In this document: one piece after another, positions 23,166 to 36,500 of the stretch
Numbering within the stretch: position 1 is the first letter of the stretch
How the letters are laid out: the number at the start of each line of letters is the position of its first letter
Sequence record: MN563784.1
Strand: one strand, 5' to 3'
DNA length: 64,000 bases
Notes under the pieces: generated by a model
Database searches by the model: none
Told to the model about the DNA's origin: nothing
The model's input: only the letters and a program-made list of their open reading frames with translations
Position numbers and translations under genes: made by a program

Positions 23166-25082
23166 ATGTCTAATGAACAACAGGTTACAAATAAGAAAAA
23201 GATTAAGGGCATTGAAGCCAAACATATTACTTATTGTACTGATCAATTTGGTAAGTTTACAGATGCGCATTTCGTTAAAGAACGAATTCATTTTGAAGAT
23301 GGTACAACTGCAAATAATTTAAGGATGTGGGAAAACTACCAGCGTCCTTTTTGGATTACCGCAAAAGGAATGCGTAACCATAAAGAAAAGAAAGATTACG
23401 AATATGAGCGTAACTTAGTTAAATACATGTCAACTCAAATTGACATGAAACGTAAGATTAGTAAAATCCTAGGTGACTATTCGGCTAGATCTCTTCGTCA
23501 ACTAGCGCGTAGTCCTTACCTATATGGCAGTGATGTTAGTTCAACCTGTTATCTGAAGCATGATTATCAAGAACGTTATCCTGGTCTAATCTCTCTAAAC
23601 ACTGTTGCTGGCGGTGACATCGAAACCAACGTTTATGAAGCTGAGAACGATGGCCAGATTATCTGTATGTCAGTTACACATAAGAACAAAGCTTTCCTAG
23701 CCTATTTAAAACGATGGGTTAGTGATATTGAAGATCCAGTGAAAGAGACATTAGAACAAGCACAAAAAGAAGAGGTATTATCACATCTAATTAAAGAACG
23801 TGGTCTAGATATTGAAGTAATGGTTGTTGAAACACCAGTAGATATTATTATTGAATGTTTTAAACGACTACATACCTGGAAACCAGATTTCTTCGCATTC
23901 TGGAATATTAGCTTCGACATTGGTAGAATCTTAAAAACATTAGAACACTATGGTGTTAATCCAGCTGATGTTTTTTCTGATCCATCGGTACCTAAGAATT
24001 ATAGGTATTTCCATTTTAAGATTGATGAACCTATGACCACCACTGCATCTGGGGTCACTAAATCTAAAGGACCGGAGGATCAATGGCATTGGATTACAGC
24101 ACCCTCTAGTTTTCAATGTATCGATTCTATGTCAACTTATCGAGTAACTCGATTAGCTAAAGGACGTGATCCTAACTATCGGTTAGAGTCTATTCTTAGA
24201 AAAGAACTAAACATCGATAAATCCACGACCATTAAAAATGATAAGGACTTAGAAGATTTTATTGAAGGTTTTAATAAACAACTAGTTGACCGACCAGGCG
24301 GCGTTATTACTAAATATATTAAAAATGTAGGTAGTAATGAATGGGTACCGGTGGATGATTTTATATTAAATGATAACTTTACCTATGGTGATTCTATTAG
24401 ATATGTAATGGAATTTGGTAAGTTAACCTTTAAAGAAACTGCACATCTTGGTGGTATCGATTGGCACCGTGAGATGCAGACTAAGCATAAAATCAAATAT
24501 GGTCTTTATAACATCATCGACTCCATTCGACTAGAACAACTTGATGAACAAGTAAATGACCTTGGTCGCTCTATAAGTCTATTCTCTAAGGCATCTGACT
24601 ATAAGAACTTTAGTTCTAACCCAAAACGACTATGTGACGATATGCACTTCTGGTATTTGAATAGACCAGAGCCATGTGTCATTGGTTCAAGTTCAGATCA
24701 GATGGTGCATGAACTTGATCAATATGTTATTGGCCATAATGATTGGATTGTTACACTACCATCATACATGGCAGGTCCAAATGGATTGCAGTGTGTTAAA
24801 GATTTACCGAATTATAAAACCTTAATCTTCTGTCATATCGCCGACCTTGACATCGTGTCGACATATCCTAACGTTAGTCAGATTCTAAATATTGCACGTG
24901 AAACATGTGTGATGGAATTCTCAATGATGGAAGGAATTAGTGAACACCATCGCCGTGAAGTTGGCGTAAACTTAACAGGTGGTAGGGTTAATGCTATTGA
25001 AATCACACAGAAGATCATGGGTGCTCCTAAAATGGACACCCTGCTAGAGAAGTTTATTAATACCTATAAGAACCCAAAGTAA
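23166..25082 (+). CDS. split family-B DNA polymerase, 3'-5' exonuclease-containing part (phiKZ gp82)
   Basis: Exo I GDIET, Exo II FWNISFD, Exo III YNIID, PolB motif A DLDIVSTYPN; ends before motifs B and C. Confidence 0.85.
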   Translation: MSNEQQVTNKKKIKGIEAKHITYCTDQFGKFTDAHFVKERIHFEDGTTANNLRMWENYQRPFWITAKGMRNHKEKKDYEYERNLVKYMSTQIDMKRKISKILGDYSARSLRQLARSPYLYGSDVSSTCYLKHDYQERYPGLISLNTVAGGDIETNVYEAENDGQIICMSVTHKNKAFLAYLKRWVSDIEDPVKETLEQAQKEEVLSHLIKERGLDIEVMVVETPVDIIIECFKRLHTWKPDFFAFWNISFDIGRILKTLEHYGVNPADVFSDPSVPKNYRYFHFKIDEPMTTTASGVTKSKGPEDQWHWITAPSSFQCIDSMSTYRVTRLAKGRDPNYRLESILRKELNIDKSTTIKNDKDLEDFIEGFNKQLVDRPGGVITKYIKNVGSNEWVPVDDFILNDNFTYGDSIRYVMEFGKLTFKETAHLGGIDWHREMQTKHKIKYGLYNIIDSIRLEQLDEQVNDLGRSISLFSKASDYKNFSSNPKRLCDDMHFWYLNRPEPCVIGSSSDQMVHELDQYVIGHNDWIVTLPSYMAGPNGLQCVKDLPNYKTLIFCHIADLDIVSTYPNVSQILNIARETCVMEFSMMEGISEHHRREVGVNLTGGRVNAIEITQKIMGAPKMDTLLEKFINTYKNPK

Positions 25083-25450
25083 TATATCAGTGGAAGCGCC
25101 GAGGAGGATATGAATGTTCATCTGTTGGTGACAAAAGATTCTCGGCTCTTTACGCAAGGCTTCCTGATGGCAGAACAATTGAGGAAGCTTGGCAGTTAGA
25201 TTGTAAAGGATATCGCATATACTCCAACCATTGGAAAGCTGGTAAAGGAAAACCACCACTAGACGGGTATAATCCCAAATATGATGATTATAAAAATCTG
25301 TGGAAAGTATGGGCGGTATCTAATAAACATCTAATGGATGAATTGCGTCAGAATGCAAAAGAACATGATAACTATCTTTCTGATGTTTTTGCTTCTACTG
25401 ATATTTCACAGGCACGTGCTCTAGCAGAACTACTTAATGAAGGATATTAA
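25082..25450 (+). CDS. hidden 122-aa NADAR-like protein (ADP-ribosyl glycohydrolase candidate); start codon reads ATA, so possibly a start-loss allele
   Basis: Open frame IYQWKRRGGYECSSVGDKRFSALYARLPDGRTIEEAWQLDCKGY...YKNLWKVW...LSDVFASTDISQARALAELLNEGY, TAA 25448-25450. Fills the gap between gp82 and the terminator. Family call is from motif recall. Confidence 0.65.
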   Translation: MYQWKRRGGYECSSVGDKRFSALYARLPDGRTIEEAWQLDCKGYRIYSNHWKAGKGKPPLDGYNPKYDDYKNLWKVWAVSNKHLMDELRQNAKEHDNYLSDVFASTDISQARALAELLNEGY

Positions 25451-25522
25451 AAAATGGAAGGTATTCCTAATTAAATATTATCAATTGATCATTACTGCTA
25501 ACATAAACTTCGACACATCATA

Positions 25523-25547
25523 AAACCCTCCCATTACGGGAGGGTTT
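25523..25547. terminator. bidirectional terminator-like stem-loop
   Basis: AAACCCTCCC-ATTAC-GGGAGGGTTT between convergent genes. Confidence 0.7.
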
Positions 25548-25553
25548 ATTTCG

Positions 25554-27068
25554 TTAACTAATTTGGTATTTTAAATTCTGATTACCGTTTAGAACATAAA
25601 TCTTACCGTCATTATTAAACGTATTGGCAAAACCTGCATCCACTAAACCAGTTTCTAAATTACCTAAATTTATCCATCGTGCTAATCGTGGTTCATAATA
25701 CTTAATTGGTGCGTTATTTTGATTTTCACCAGCGATTACATAAAGTTCACCAGATGGGCGTATATTAATAGCTGCACCAAGAGGTATACCTGTAGTTATT
25801 GGTTTGGACCAATTATTGTTGGTTTGATTGTACGATATGATTCCAGTGTTAACACCAGCACCAACCGTACCACCAATAACGCATACGCTATTATTATAAA
25901 TACTCACTGAATAATCTTGGGTATATTCCCCAGTATCATTAAATGCTGCACCACTGGTATATGTATCTGTAGTTGGATTGTACATTAATGTAAATCCACG
26001 ATTATTTGTCGCAGTTGTATCAGCTGCACCTAATATGTAGATTAACCCATTAAGACTAGTTCCACGTGCATACCGGCAAGCTATCGTGCCTGGTGATTTT
26101 ATTTCCCATGTATTAGTTGCAGGATCATAACACTGCATATCTTTAGTAAGTACACCATCTGTGGCACTTTCACCACCATAGAAATATACTTTACCATTAA
26201 ATGCAACAGCCGAGCATTGTTTAACTGCTATAGGCGTACCAGTTGGTTGTAATGTTGTTAACTTACCCGTGACTAAATTCAGTGTACGTAGAGCAGTATT
26301 AGCATTATTCTTACCACCGTAATAATAGACTAAGTTACCTATTTGGGCACCTGCTGCCATTTCGTTATCAGTTTCAAAATCAGTAAGTTTAATAACATTA
26401 TCTTTAACGAATGGATATGTACCACTAGCATAAACCACTGGACGCCAACCTTGGGTTGCAGCACCCGTTTCACTACTTGACGAGCTAGTTATATCAATCG
26501 CATAGTAGCCACGATAGAGCTGGTCATTAACTGGATCACTACCTGGGTCTCTTCCCCAGTTAGTAGTACCATCAGTGCTAATACCACCAGCGACCGCTTG
26601 GTTAATACCTAAGTCATTATCTGTAAATTTATAAGGCCAGTTAGCACCATTTAAATTAGATACGTGAACATTATAAAGTAACCTTTGCCATTCTGATGTG
26701 GCACCAGCCATTGTTAATAAACCAAATTTATAAATGTTCCCCATAAATCTAACTTCATAGTCACCATTACGGAGTCCGGCATTATTAAGCCGTGATTTTT
26801 GTATTGATTTACGAGCTGGTTTCTTTGGTATGTAACAAGTAACATTTTTATTAGAGAACTTTAACCATGGTTGTCCATCATTGATTACTGTTCCAAATGT
26901 CATATTAACTAATTTAGCTGCATCATCATAACCAAATAATTCTGAAGATGTTGTTTCACCATACAAACCTAATTCCCTTGTCCCAGCTATCAGTGTTTTA
27001 GGACCTGGATAAGGATCGGAATATATAGGCGTATTTGTTAGTCCAGAAGACAACAATAACTCAAACAT
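25554..27068 (-). CDS. virion protein with C-terminal Kelch-like beta-propeller (phiKZ gp83-like)
   Basis: 504 aa; repeats with a Kelch-type spacing of about 47-50 aa: VYYYGG, VYFYGG...YDPATNTW, IYILGA...YNPTTDTY, VCVIGG...YNQTNNNW, LYVIAG...YEPRLARW. Confidence 0.75.
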   Translation of the reverse strand: MFELLLSSGLTNTPIYSDPYPGPKTLIAGTRELGLYGETTSSELFGYDDAAKLVNMTFGTVINDGQPWLKFSNKNVTCYIPKKPARKSIQKSRLNNAGLRNGDYEVRFMGNIYKFGLLTMAGATSEWQRLLYNVHVSNLNGANWPYKFTDNDLGINQAVAGGISTDGTTNWGRDPGSDPVNDQLYRGYYAIDITSSSSSETGAATQGWRPVVYASGTYPFVKDNVIKLTDFETDNEMAAGAQIGNLVYYYGGKNNANTALRTLNLVTGKLTTLQPTGTPIAVKQCSAVAFNGKVYFYGGESATDGVLTKDMQCYDPATNTWEIKSPGTIACRYARGTSLNGLIYILGAADTTATNNRGFTLMYNPTTDTYTSGAAFNDTGEYTQDYSVSIYNNSVCVIGGTVGAGVNTGIISYNQTNNNWSKPITTGIPLGAAINIRPSGELYVIAGENQNNAPIKYYEPRLARWINLGNLETGLVDAGFANTFNNDGKIYVLNGNQNLKYQIS

Positions 27069-35567: not shown

Positions 35568-36500
35568 GTGATGAGAATTATTGATTATGTACGTGAACTC
35601 GCACCAGTTACTGAACGTCGTGAACTATTAAATCAAATCCGTTCATTACGTGAAGAATATGATGCAACTCTCGCACCAATTATTGACGATGTAGGTGAAG
35701 TATTTGGTAATATGCAACTTAAATCAGATTTAGGTATGCGACTATCTACTGAACTACGGCGAGCGATTAGTTTTAATACCGAACCAATTACACTAGTACT
35801 GGATACTCTTTCAAATATTCGTGGTAGCTTTGATATGATCGAAAGCGAAATCCGACGTTTATTTGCTATTCAGTTTACTAACTCTAATCTAACCTTTGAC
35901 CGTGCAAATATGCTACGTTTTGTTGATGGTCTTAGTTTCTATATTCGTTATGGCCGTAAACTACTGCTAAATCTAATTGCACAAGAAGCAATGAAATTAG
36001 GTAAGGCTACAGAATTAAAATCATCTCGTGCTGAGAAAGAATGGCTATACACCAATATGGCACAATTCATTACTCTGTATCCAGCAATGAGTCTTAAGAC
36101 TAATGAACTGAAACAACGCTTAAGCCGTGCATCTAGTGCTGAAGTCAATGAAGGTACTTATGATGTAGCTGTGAGTGCTCTCTCTATAGCTCAACGTGAT
36201 CCACTTAACATGGATGGCTTCTCACCTCGTCAGAACCCGTTCGTGCTATTTGGCAAGTTCTTAGCTGAGTATCAGGTTGAACGTTTTAAAGAAGCTGAGC
36301 AAGAATTCCTTGCACTTCAACTACGTTTACAAGAAATGCGGGAAATGCAAAGTAATGGTAAAGTGGATGCACGCCTACAGAAGCTTATTAAAGAGTATGA
36401 AATTCGTATCTCTGATTATAACTATCGCCTAGGTATGATCCAAGATCGCGCATCTGAGTTCTTTGCTAACCATCGTGATCTACTATCTCTTGGTCACTAA
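35568..36500 (+). CDS. head protein (phiKZ gp90-like)
   Basis: 310-aa helical ORF; synteny. Confidence 0.8.
   Translation: MMRIIDYVRELAPVTERRELLNQIRSLREEYDATLAPIIDDVGEVFGNMQLKSDLGMRLSTELRRAISFNTEPITLVLDTLSNIRGSFDMIESEIRRLFAIQFTNSNLTFDRANMLRFVDGLSFYIRYGRKLLLNLIAQEAMKLGKATELKSSRAEKEWLYTNMAQFITLYPAMSLKTNELKQRLSRASSAEVNEGTYDVAVSALSIAQRDPLNMDGFSPRQNPFVLFGKFLAEYQVERFKEAEQEFLALQLRLQEMREMQSNGKVDARLQKLIKEYEIRISDYNYRLGMIQDRASEFFANHRDLLSLGH

What the first reader, a model, noticed from the sequence alone, without database searches (positions are those of the whole stretch)
25067..25450. Hidden NADAR-like ORF with an ATA in the coupled start position
Seen: the apparently empty 470-nt gap after gp82 holds a 122-codon frame (25082-25450) bounded by TAA at 25067-25069. 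The gp82 stop reads TAATA, where the operons here use TAATG coupling (15643, 36498, 48445), so it is one base from a coupled start. Motifs ECSS..DKRFSALY...DGRTIEEAWQ..CK, Y..LW and LSD.F...SQARALA parallel what I recall of NADAR proteins (LSNFY...TVEH.FQ..K) and DarT1-associated NADAR antitoxins (EISSK...LSAFN...TVE..FQ; FTD......CQARS.A). Known: NADARs remove ADP-ribose from guanine and phage NADARs can counter DarTG1. Inference: an anti-DarT1 enzyme next to the DNA polymerase gene, either expressed weakly from ATA, silenced by start loss, or mis-sequenced.
Basis: partly seen in the sequence, partly recalled or inferred. Interest (0 to 1): 0.75.

Follow-up and report, generated by a model that had tools for sequence, protein, structure and literature searches.

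The report
Frameshift extension of phiKZ DNA polymerase
The "empty" gap after the phiKZ-type DNA polymerase gene holds a strongly conserved 122-residue domain with no start codon of its own. It is most likely made as a rare tail on the polymerase when ribosomes slip back one base at a classic slippery site, an unannotated feature of a well-studied jumbo phage.

Summary
The window is a phiKZ-type jumbo phage. The frame 25070-25450 is open, lacks ATG/GTG/TTG until codon 85, and matches PHROG 9995 (E 1.8e-55).

It is not dead or mis-sequenced:
- The stretch is identical in 34 GenBank genomes.
- dN/dS is about 0.03 within the start-less clade.
- Its annotated 38-residue tail (PHIKZ082.1) was detected by published mass spectrometry. 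It co-sedimented with both polymerase subunits at about 0.65% of gp82 abundance.

The ATA is probably not a start. gp82 ends in C_CCA_AAG|TAA, the only in-phase occurrence of the three most shift-prone bacterial heptamers in about 19,900 ORF codons of the window. The -1 frame then runs 123 codons.

Of 30 related polymerase 3' ends:
- 29 carry this domain.
- 18 have it in the -1 frame, each behind C_CCA_AAG, G_GGA_AAG or A_AAA_AAG, mostly without any start codon.
- 8 have it in the +1 frame behind a conserved GAA_AAG_AAG.
- 3 have it in-frame behind one TAG.

Two more distant phiKZ-like contigs encode direct in-frame fusions.

NADAR membership is not supported by sequence. There is a weak fold resemblance (TM up to 0.57) and NADAR-like fusion partners (DUF4326, SLOG).

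The parts
23166..25082 (+). gp82 = DNAP-N, the N-terminal subunit (NTD, exonuclease, part of palm) of the split B-family DNA polymerase; this is the zero frame
   Evidence: The ORF is listed. It is annotated as DNA polymerase / PHIKZ082 in relatives. Subunit identity comes from bioRxiv 10.64898/2026.09.30.755723.
25073..25079 (+). Slippery heptamer C_CCA_AAG, in phase with gp82 (AAC CCA AAG)
   Evidence: Sequence. It is the only in-phase A_AAA_AAG/C_CCA_AAG/G_GGA_AAG in 19,891 ORF codons of the window. It is conserved, or replaced by another shift-prone heptamer, in all 18 -1-frame relatives. These heptamers are highly shift-prone in E. coli (PMC5009743).
25080..25082 (+). Zero-frame TAA stop, flush with the heptamer ('shifty stop' arrangement)
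   Evidence: The same flush arrangement is seen in 10 of 11 C_CCA_AAG/G_GGA_AAG lineages.
25079..25450 (+). -1-frame extension: 123 sense codons (Val plus the 122-residue domain 'X') and a TAA stop. The predicted trans-frame product is 638 + 123 = 761 residues.
   Evidence: The -1 frame is open for 123 codons after the shift. Translation. Purifying selection.
25085..25447 (+). Domain X core (PHROG 9995); the AlphaFold2 model has pLDDT 96.7
   Evidence: profile positions 2-123 of 124; 25 invariant columns in 78 sequences.
25334..25450 (+). The 38-codon ORF annotated as PHIKZ082.1 / PHIKZ_p28 in phiKZ and PA7. It is only the C-terminal piece of X (PHROG 33573).
   Evidence: It was detected by mass spectrometry at log10 iBAQ 8.1 and co-sedimented with PHIKZ082 and PHIKZ050.
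25110..25199 (+). Out-of-frame 29-codon ORF behind GGAGGA, annotated in phage ANB1. It is a by-product of the Gly-Gly-Tyr-Glu codons of X and not part of the system.
   Evidence: PhiPA3 has TAC there and therefore no ATG.
25523..25547 (+). Intrinsic-terminator-like hairpin (10 pairs) plus T run that ends the polymerase-X transcription unit. It lies between convergent genes.
25554..27068 (-). Convergent neighbour gp83, a virion structural protein

Best explanation
The 122-residue frame is not a separate gene with a damaged start. It is a C-terminal extension of the DNA polymerase N-subunit (gp82), reached by programmed -1 ribosomal frameshifting.

Proposed mechanism:
1. Ribosomes finishing gp82 pause with CCA and AAG in the P and A sites, with the TAA stop next.
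2. A small share re-pair on CCC AAA.
3. These ribosomes read on through Val and 122 more codons to the TAA at 25448-25450.
4. The result is a 761-residue DNAP-N-X protein beside the normal 638-residue gp82. The published iBAQ ratio suggests roughly 1%.

The extended subunit still joins gp50 (DNAP-C), so a minority of polymerase cores carry X.

Shown:
- the site, the frames and their conservation;
- the selection on X;
- translation of the X frame in infected cells and its co-sedimentation with the polymerase;
- natural in-frame fusions in distant relatives.

Inferred:
- the slip itself and its rate;
- the function of X. My best guess for X (about 0.4) is a NADAR-like or analogous hydrolase that removes ADP-ribose-type adducts from DNA bases or nucleotides at the replication fork.
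For: 1. Heptamer uniqueness. C_CCA_AAG lies in phase, flush with the stop. It is the only such heptamer in 19,891 ORF codons of the window, and the -1 frame is open for 123 codons after it.
2. Spelling. NNC CCA AAG is expected about 2% of the time for an x-P-K tail under this codon usage. It recurs although the residue before the proline is N, P, S, V or A.
3. Polymerase-anchored survey of 30 loci.
   - 29 have X at the 3' end of the polymerase gene.
   - All 18 in the -1 frame have in-phase C_CCA_AAG, G_GGA_AAG or A_AAA_AAG, the three heptamers called highly shift-prone in E. coli (PMC5009743).
   - The single locus without X (L127) has none.
4. No own start. Most lineages have no start codon at or near the first residue of X (ACA, ACT, GTT, GTA, GTC, AGC, AAA). 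In the A_AAA_AAG lineages the polymerase zero frame runs 24-96 nt past the heptamer, overlapping the X-coding sequence by up to 79 nt.
5. Other routes to the same junction. Three loci have X in frame behind a single TAG, and eight have it in the +1 frame behind a conserved GAA_AAG_AAG.
6. Natural one-frame fusions.
   - P0341 is 698 residues: a gp82 homologue at 30% identity with X at 562-678, on a contig next to a PhiKZ_MCP gene.
   - P0267 holds a homologue of gp82 residues 550-630 followed by X.
7. Selection. Six start-less Phikzvirus genomes keep the frame open, with 19 synonymous-only against 4 amino-acid-changing variable codons. dN/dS is 0.026 against PhiPA3.
8. Published Grad-seq mass spectrometry (PMC10914614, Suppl. 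Table 1).
   - PHIKZ082.1 was detected at log10 iBAQ 8.1.
   - It peaks in fraction 5, like PHIKZ082 (r = 0.94) and PHIKZ050 (r = 0.95).
   - A small protein such as PHIKZ050.1 peaks in fraction 1 instead.
9. Function of X.
   - The only PDB hits with TM above 0.4 are YbiA (0.53) and Phytophthora NADAR (0.44).
   - About ten NADAR-named viral models score TM 0.43-0.57.
   - Elsewhere X is fused to DUF4326 (17 of 74), SLOG domains, an AlkB-like oxygenase, RNase H and a PIF1-type helicase.
   - DUF4326 and SLOG are the partner set reported for viral NADAR and Macro domains (PMC9503650).
Against: - No peptide spanning the junction and no 87-kDa gp82 species has been shown. The mass-spectrometry signal sits just above the study's detection cut-off (log10 iBAQ > 8). 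It would also fit a separately made X that binds the polymerase.
- A second deep proteome lists PHIKZ082 but not PHIKZ_p28.
- No conserved stimulatory RNA structure follows the heptamer. The consensus fold is -1.5 kcal/mol. The window alone gives -22.5 kcal/mol, z = -2.1, starting 10 nt downstream. No consistent upstream Shine-Dalgarno-like element was seen.
- Four or five lineages (PhiPA3 ATG; 201phi2-1, L007 and PS119XW GTG; L103 ATG) do have a usable start at or next to the first codon of X, so independent initiation may coexist there.
- A -1 relation is also what ordinary 4-nt stop/start overlaps give.
- All sequence tests for NADAR homology were negative. Foldseek E-values were above 0.1.
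Confidence: 0.75

Rival explanations
1. X is a separate protein started at the ATA (or the preceding GTA) by termination-reinitiation after the gp82 stop.
For: - TAATA occupies the place of the TAATG overlaps seen at 36498 and 48445.
- PhiPA3 has ATG, and 201phi2-1, L007 and PS119XW have GTG, at or next to this codon.
- PHROG 9995 profile position 1 aligns to this codon.
- A low abundance (0.65% of gp82) would suit a very weak start.
Against: - Relatives have ACA, ACT, GTT, GTA, GTC, AGC, AAA or CGG there, which are not initiators.
- Others have X overlapped by up to 79 nt of polymerase frame, or placed behind an in-frame TAG.
- There is no Shine-Dalgarno sequence before 25082.
- This model does not explain the heptamer's conservation and substitutions.
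- A free 14-kDa protein should sit in gradient fractions 1-3, not 5, unless it is bound to the polymerase.
Confidence: 0.1
2. X is made on its own by some other route and binds the polymerase non-covalently. Candidate routes are the annotated internal ATG at 25334, which gives 38 residues, or an unrecognised start.
For: - PHIKZ082.1 is the annotated product.
- Its peptides are what the mass spectrometry matched, and co-sedimentation does not prove covalent linkage.
Against: - Synonymous-biased change and 25 invariant residues extend over the whole 122 codons. Most of the invariant residues lie upstream of codon 85.
- There is no Shine-Dalgarno sequence before 25334.
- 38 residues would be only the last helix of a compact fold.
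Confidence: 0.07
3. Decaying remnant: a once-coupled gene that lost its start in Phikzvirus and is now untranslated or only noise. A sequencing error is a variant of this reading.
For: There is no canonical start. Most genome annotations leave the gap empty or call only 38 codons.
Against: - The frame is intact in all six Phikzvirus variants examined, with dN/dS about 0.03.
- The stretch is 100% identical in 34 independent records.
- Protein was detected.
- The start-less state is the common one across genera.
Confidence: 0.03

Closest known systems
Phage T7 gene 10A/10B and phage lambda G/GT: -1 frameshift near the end of a gene, giving a minor C-terminally extended product
   Same: - An in-phase X_XXY_YYZ heptamer; lambda uses G_GGA_AAG, which one lineage here (L017) also uses.
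- A minor longer product alongside the major one.
- A downstream frame without its own start.
- Conservation of the arrangement rather than of the sequence.
   Different: - Here the recoded gene is a subunit of the replicative DNA polymerase, not a capsid or tail chaperone.
- The added part is a widespread, enzyme-like, autonomous domain.
- The heptamer lies directly against the stop codon.
- No conserved stimulatory structure was found.
E. coli dnaX tau/gamma: A_AAA_AAG -1 frameshift in a replication gene
   Same: - A replication-machinery gene.
- The same heptamer as in eight lineages here.
- Two products in a fixed ratio.
   Different: - dnaX frameshifting truncates the protein (gamma) and is about 50% efficient, with a Shine-Dalgarno-like element and a hairpin.
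- Here it extends the protein by a domain, probably at about 1%, with no stimulators recognised.
Phage Qbeta A1 readthrough protein: a stop-codon readthrough extension
   Same: Three related loci (L071/L072, L088) place X in the same frame as the polymerase, behind a single TAG. That gives the same extension logic by another recoding route.
   Different: That arrangement is not the one in this window. Whether TAG is read through or reassigned in those contigs was not settled. In L088 there is no other TAG in about 600 polymerase codons.
NADAR / YbiA superfamily, including T4 AdfN (gp30.3), the anti-DarT1 DNA ADP-ribosylglycohydrolase
   Same: - A small alpha-helical core flanked by two small beta elements (against the description in PMC11543638).
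- Best TM-scores of 0.44-0.57 in both structure libraries.
- Invariant E34, Q38 and K42 on and after the first helix, against invariant E36 and Q40 and near-invariant K43 in the gp30.3 alignment. E36 and K43 are catalytic in AdfN.
- The same fusion partners, DUF4326 and SLOG.
   Different: - No Pfam PF08719 or PF08010 match; hhalign probability 0.2%; hmmsearch E > 0.5.
- X is 30-60 residues shorter.
- The Glu-to-Lys spacing is 8 residues, not 7.
- The conserved His and C-terminal Glu/Phe columns of the NADAR alignment have no evident counterpart.
- There is no DarT neighbour and no PADLOC hit.
phiKZ AdfM (gp104), a nuclear macrodomain anti-DarT2 factor
   Same: [quoted passage not shown] It shows that this selective pressure acts on phiKZ.
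   Different: It has a different fold and is a different gene. It is made as a free protein and imported. X has no demonstrated activity.

Membership tests
Programmed -1 ribosomal frameshift sites (bacterial/phage type) | In-phase X_XXY_YYZ heptamer of a type known to slip on bacterial ribosomes | tested here: met
   C_CCA_AAG at 25073-25079 is in the gp82 phase. It is listed as highly shift-prone in E. coli (PMC5009743).
Programmed -1 ribosomal frameshift sites (bacterial/phage type) | A long -1 frame that opens at or before the heptamer and has no initiation codon of its own | tested here: met
   The -1 frame opens at 25070 and runs 123 codons after the shift. The first ATG/GTG/TTG is at codon 85 of X.
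Programmed -1 ribosomal frameshift sites (bacterial/phage type) | Site and frame relation conserved in diverged relatives, with heptamer substitutions that stay within slippery types | tested here: met
   All 18 -1-frame loci have C_CCA_AAG, G_GGA_AAG or A_AAA_AAG. The one locus without X has none.
Programmed -1 ribosomal frameshift sites (bacterial/phage type) | Stimulatory element: a downstream hairpin or pseudoknot 5-9 nt away, or an upstream Shine-Dalgarno-like sequence | tested here: not met
   The consensus structure is -1.5 kcal/mol with no covarying helix near the site. The window alone gives a modest hairpin starting 10 nt after the heptamer, z = -2.1. The adjacent stop codon is the only candidate stimulator.
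Programmed -1 ribosomal frameshift sites (bacterial/phage type) | Trans-frame protein observed | tested here: inconclusive
   Published Grad-seq mass spectrometry detects the X-frame product co-sedimenting with both polymerase subunits. No junction peptide or intact mass is available.
NADAR / YbiA superfamily (Pfam PF08719, PF08010) | Significant match to the family's sequence models | tested here: not met
   No NADAR hit at E<=10 for the window protein, nor at E<=1 for any of 78 family members.
NADAR / YbiA superfamily (Pfam PF08719, PF08010) | Profile-profile similarity to bona fide NADARs | tested here: not met
   hhalign of A1 against A2 (T4 gp30.3 plus 60 homologues, several also matching PF08719) gave probability 0.2% locally and 0.04% globally. 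Reciprocal hmmsearch gave E > 0.5.
NADAR / YbiA superfamily (Pfam PF08719, PF08010) | YbiA-like fold | tested here: inconclusive
   The model has pLDDT 96.7. Foldseek gave YbiA TMq 0.53 and PnNADAR TMq 0.44, the only PDB hits above 0.25, but with E > 1. Viral NADAR models gave TMq 0.43-0.57 at probability <= 0.41.
NADAR / YbiA superfamily (Pfam PF08719, PF08010) | Catalytic Glu and Lys on the first core helix (AdfN E36 and K43) | tested here: inconclusive
   X has invariant E34, Q38 and K42. The NADAR alignment has E36 and Q40 invariant and K43 near-invariant. No significant alignment joins them, and the spacing differs by one residue.
NADAR / YbiA superfamily (Pfam PF08719, PF08010) | Hydrolysis of ADP-ribosyl-guanine or related N-glycosidic adducts | not testable with these tools
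   No biochemical data exist for any member of PHROG 9995.
PHROG 9995 (phage protein family of unknown function) | Full-length match to the family profile | tested here: met
   E 1.8e-55, covering profile positions 2-123 of 124.
Translationally coupled gene pair with overlapping stop/start (TAATG type) | A start codon overlapping the upstream stop | tested here: not met
   The window has TAATA. The overlap with a start codon exists in PhiPA3 and L103 only.
DarT1-associated NADAR antitoxin (DarTG1) | Adjacent DarT toxin gene, or a match to defence-system models | tested here: not met
   The neighbours are the polymerase and a virion protein. There was no PADLOC hit for five family members at E<=10.

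The most novel reading that the evidence does not exclude
Nucleus-forming jumbo phages set the dose of an accessory enzyme on their replicative polymerase by recoding. The same polymerase-X junction is crossed by -1 frameshifting (three interchangeable heptamers), by a +1/-2 shift at GAA_AAG_AAG, by TAG readthrough, or by plain fusion. In this reading X is a minimal NADAR-like glycohydrolase. It rides on about 1% of polymerases and clears ADP-ribose-type base adducts, the lesions made by DarT-type defence systems, ahead of or behind the fork inside the phage nucleus.
Probability: 0.3. Interest if true: 0.9.

Novelty: new variant of a known kind. Interest (0 to 1): 0.8.

Why it matters
- phiKZ is the reference nucleus-forming phage. 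Its polymerase core was solved by cryo-EM in 2026 from gp82 plus gp50 alone. That paper does not mention an extension.
- A conserved recoding signal that adds a 14-kDa enzyme-like domain to a subset of polymerases would change the parts list of the chimallivirus replisome.
- It would explain an "empty" gap in about 60 GenBank genomes.
- It would give the widespread orphan family PHROG 9995 (855 clusters, also found inside 2,000-6,000-residue phage proteins) a first functional anchor.
- It would add a rare case of one junction crossed by several different recoding mechanisms within one phage lineage.
- If X removes base adducts, it links anti-defence chemistry directly to the replication fork.

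Tried and rejected
- **Internal frameshift idea.** I first wondered whether the real start was the out-of-frame ATG at 25110 behind GGAGGA, with a frameshift inside the gene. I rejected this. The nine residues upstream of it are conserved family-wide, and PhiPA3 has no ATG there. I count no stops and no frameshifts within the X frame.
- **Sequencing error.** Rejected.
- **Family libraries.** Pfam, NCBIfam and PADLOC gave nothing meaningful. The PDB sequence search gave only a spurious uL3 match at E 0.007.
- **NADAR by sequence.** I fetched T4 gp30.3 (AdfN) by an accession shown in papers and built alignment A2. hhalign in three modes and reciprocal hmmsearch were all negative.
- **Stimulatory RNA.** None is conserved.
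- **Giant X-containing proteins.** Nine of ten scanned had no Pfam hits.
- **Literature.** There was no main-text hit for PHIKZ082.1, gp82.1 or PHIKZ_p28. Within the searched library, nothing mentioned frameshifting in a jumbo-phage polymerase.
- **Proteome supplements.** The Fossati 2023 SEC-MS supplements did not list PHIKZ_p28. For PhiPA3 they listed neither X nor the polymerase. The 2021 Grad-seq supplements had no hit.
- **Not done on purpose.** I built and folded no sequence joined across the frameshift.
- **Transparency.** While thinking, I compared the consensus lines that the alignment tool printed for A1 and A2. Nothing in this report rests on them; the motif comparison uses the invariant-column lists only.
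Full report
**What is there**

The window is a phiKZ-type jumbo phage. The region 24700-25800 is 100% identical to PA7, SL2, KTN4 and 31 other Pseudomonas phage records, and 95-99% identical to 13 more, including phiKZ itself.

- The ORF 23166-25082 is PHIKZ082. A 2026 preprint shows this is DNAP-N, the N-terminal subunit (NTD, exonuclease, part of palm) of a split B-family polymerase whose other half is gp50.
- Every coordinate in the finding checks out.
  - The stop reads TAATA.
  - The other frame is bounded by TAA at 25067-25069 and is open to 25450.
  - 25082-25447 is 122 codons, and the first ATG/GTG/TTG in that frame is at 25334.
- Genome records either leave the gap empty or annotate only the last 38 codons as PHIKZ082.1.

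**It is a real protein domain**

- The frame matches PHROG 9995 at E 1.8e-55 over its whole length.
- It has 500 homologues in the first search, at 52-88% identity.
- It has 855 cluster representatives at E<=1e-3 among 1.84 billion proteins.
- In 78 aligned members, 25 columns are invariant.
- AlphaFold2 gives a compact alpha+beta model with pLDDT 96.7.
- PhiPA3 gp084 and 201phi2-1 gp143 are annotated full-length homologues in the same position.

**It is not dead and not an error**

- Six Phikzvirus genomes that all lack a canonical start keep the frame open.
- They differ at 19 synonymous-only codons against 4 amino-acid-changing ones.
- Window versus phiKZ gives dN 0.0035 and dS 0.127. Window versus PhiPA3 gives dN/dS 0.026.
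- I count no stops and no frameshifts inside the frame.

**How it is expressed: the comparative argument**

gp82 ends AAC CCA AAG TAA. C_CCA_AAG in that phase is a canonical -1 slippery heptamer, and X lies in the -1 frame.

[quoted passage not shown] In the whole window, with 19,891 codons in ORFs of at least 100 residues on both strands, there is exactly one in-phase occurrence of any of the three. It is this one, and the -1 frame after it is open for 123 codons.

I then collected relatives in two ways: by the X domain (80 IMG/VR loci) and, independently of X, by the C-terminus of the polymerase subunit (30 loci).

In the polymerase-anchored set, 29 of 30 loci carry X at the polymerase 3' end.

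| Arrangement | Loci | Signal before X |
|---|---|---|
| X in the -1 frame | 18 | In-phase C_CCA_AAG, G_GGA_AAG or A_AAA_AAG in every case |
| X in the +1 frame | 8 | Conserved in-phase GAA_AAG_AAG |
| X in the same frame | 3 | One TAG |
| No X (L127) | 1 | No such heptamer |

- The codon at the first residue of X is ATA here. Elsewhere it is ACA, ACT, GTT, GTA, GTC, AGC or AAA. It is ATG or GTG in only a few lineages.
- In the A_AAA_AAG lineages, the polymerase zero frame continues 24-96 nt past the heptamer. It overlaps the X-coding sequence by up to 79 nt, and the first in-frame start lies 22-26 codons inside the conserved domain.
- Under this genome's codon usage, an x-P-K tail would be spelled NNC CCA AAG about 2% of the time. 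Yet that spelling recurs in about ten lineages, although the residue before the proline varies.
- Two more distant phiKZ-like contigs encode the fusion in a single frame.
  - P0341 is 698 residues: a gp82 homologue with X at 562-678, next to a PhiKZ_MCP gene.
  - P0267 holds a homologue of gp82 residues 550-630 followed by X.

Taken together, X is a polymerase appendage whose translation depends on ribosomes coming from the polymerase gene. The ATA is an ordinary isoleucine codon.

**Published expression data**

Gerovac et al. 2024 (PMC10914614) analysed phiKZ-infected cells by glycerol-gradient mass spectrometry.

| Protein | log10 iBAQ | Peak fraction | r with PHIKZ082.1 |
|---|---|---|---|
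| PHIKZ082.1 (X-frame tail) | 8.1 | 5 | - |
| PHIKZ082 (DNAP-N) | 10.29 | 5 | 0.94 |
| PHIKZ050 (DNAP-C) | 10.46 | 5 | 0.95 |
| PHIKZ050.1 (small protein) | 7.35 | 1 | 0.21 |

- The values come from Supplementary Table 1.
- The authors note that most phage proteins sit in fractions 1-3 and that polymerase subunits sediment in fraction five.
- So the X frame is translated, and its product travels with the polymerase core at roughly 0.65% of gp82. That fits a low-efficiency frameshift.
- Caveats:
  - The signal is just above the study's cut-off.
  - Linkage is not proven.
  - A second proteome lists PHIKZ082 but not PHIKZ_p28.

**What is missing for the frameshift model**

- No conserved downstream structure or upstream Shine-Dalgarno-like element was found.
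- The flush stop codon is the only evident stimulator in the C_CCA_AAG group. The "shifty stop" idea rests on general knowledge; the review only cites the paper of that name.
- The mechanism in the +1-frame group is unresolved. A -2 re-pairing of the Lys tRNA from AAG to the AAA two bases upstream is possible. This is my inference.

**What X does**

Sequence methods do not place X in NADAR:
- no Pfam hit in 78 members;
- hhalign probability 0.2% against an alignment built around T4 AdfN/gp30.3;
- no PADLOC or NCBIfam hit.

Three weak lines still point that way:
1. The only PDB hits with TM above 0.4 are YbiA (0.53) and Phytophthora NADAR (0.44). About ten NADAR-named viral models score 0.43-0.57, all at non-significant E-values.
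2. Invariant E34, Q38 and K42 at the first helix echo invariant E36 and Q40 and near-invariant K43 of the gp30.3 alignment. E36 and K43 are the catalytic residues of AdfN.
3. Outside chimalliviruses, X is fused to several other domains:
   - DUF4326 in 17 of 74 multidomain members;
   - SLOG domains;
   - DUF488-N3a, RNase H, an AlkB-like oxygenase, a guanylate kinase and a PIF1-type helicase;
   - and it is embedded in 2,000-6,000-residue proteins.

DUF4326 and SLOG are the partners reported for viral NADAR and Macro domains (PMC9503650).

phiKZ is known to face DNA ADP-ribosylation and already carries a macrodomain counter-measure, AdfM (PMC13309987).

My working model, at about 0.4, is a NADAR-like or analogous adduct hydrolase tethered to the polymerase. 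Membership in NADAR is not claimed.

**Novelty**

- Within the searched library, no paper mentions PHIKZ082.1 in its main text or any recoding of a jumbo-phage polymerase gene.
- The 2026 structural study of gp82 and gp50 does not mention an extension.
- Frameshift-made extensions are a known kind. A replicative polymerase subunit as the carrier is new, as far as I could find. So are a widespread orphan domain as the cargo and several recoding routes at one junction.

**Limits**

I built no trans-frame sequence, so the fusion itself was not modelled. Efficiency, linkage and activity remain inferred.

Noticed in passing
L107, L108, L110-L112, L116-L118 (IMG/VR jumbo-phage contigs), about 1675-1714 in each locus: In eight related phages X lies in the +1 (= -2) frame of the polymerase gene and overlaps it by 17-20 nt. 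It sits behind a strictly conserved in-phase GAA_AAG_AAG. The first X codon is GTG, TTG, CTG, ACG or CGG. The recoding mechanism (-2 or +1) is unresolved.
   Followed up: partly
L071/L072 (2995) and L088 (2980); the same contigs as L125/L126 and L122: X follows the polymerase subunit in the same frame, after a single TAG and with no start codon. In L088 there is no other TAG in about 600 polymerase codons, so this looks like readthrough rather than genome-wide TAG reassignment.
   Followed up: partly
L004:920-1225 (PhiPA3, NC_028999): A group I intron (Rfam RF00028, 71.7 bits, E 8e-17) interrupts the PhiPA3 DNAP-N gene. The deposited 'DNA polymerase' CDS stops at the intron. The last exon, which ends in the heptamer, is unannotated.
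   Followed up: partly
window, whole 64 kb: Apart from the gp82 end, there are no in-phase A_AAA_AAG, C_CCA_AAG or G_GGA_AAG heptamers in about 19,900 ORF codons. By my rough base-composition estimate (not a tool result), several A_AAA_AAG would be expected by chance. This suggests avoidance of shifty sites.
   Followed up: no
P0253, P0256, P0272, P0278, P0282, P0310, P0351 and others; L044, L059, L066: The X domain also occurs inside giant phage proteins of 2,000-6,000 residues. The nine giant proteins or ORF stretches scanned that lack other domains have no Pfam hits. They may be polyvalent, virion-packaged proteins.
   Followed up: partly
window 25110-25199: A strong GGAGGA followed by ATG lies out of frame inside X. 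It gives a 29-codon ORF that phage ANB1 annotates as a gene. It arises from the Gly-Gly-Tyr-Glu codons of X and is absent in PhiPA3.
   Followed up: yes
L097:2550-4711: In one metagenomic phiKZ-like contig the polymerase subunit is called as two adjacent ORFs in different frames (482 and 236 residues). The second ORF carries X in frame. I count one apparent frame change and did not check whether it is real or an assembly error.
   Followed up: no
window 25523-25547: A 10-pair GC-rich hairpin with a T run sits between the convergent polymerase-X unit and gp83. It is a likely terminator for the plus-strand unit, and possibly for both.
   Followed up: no
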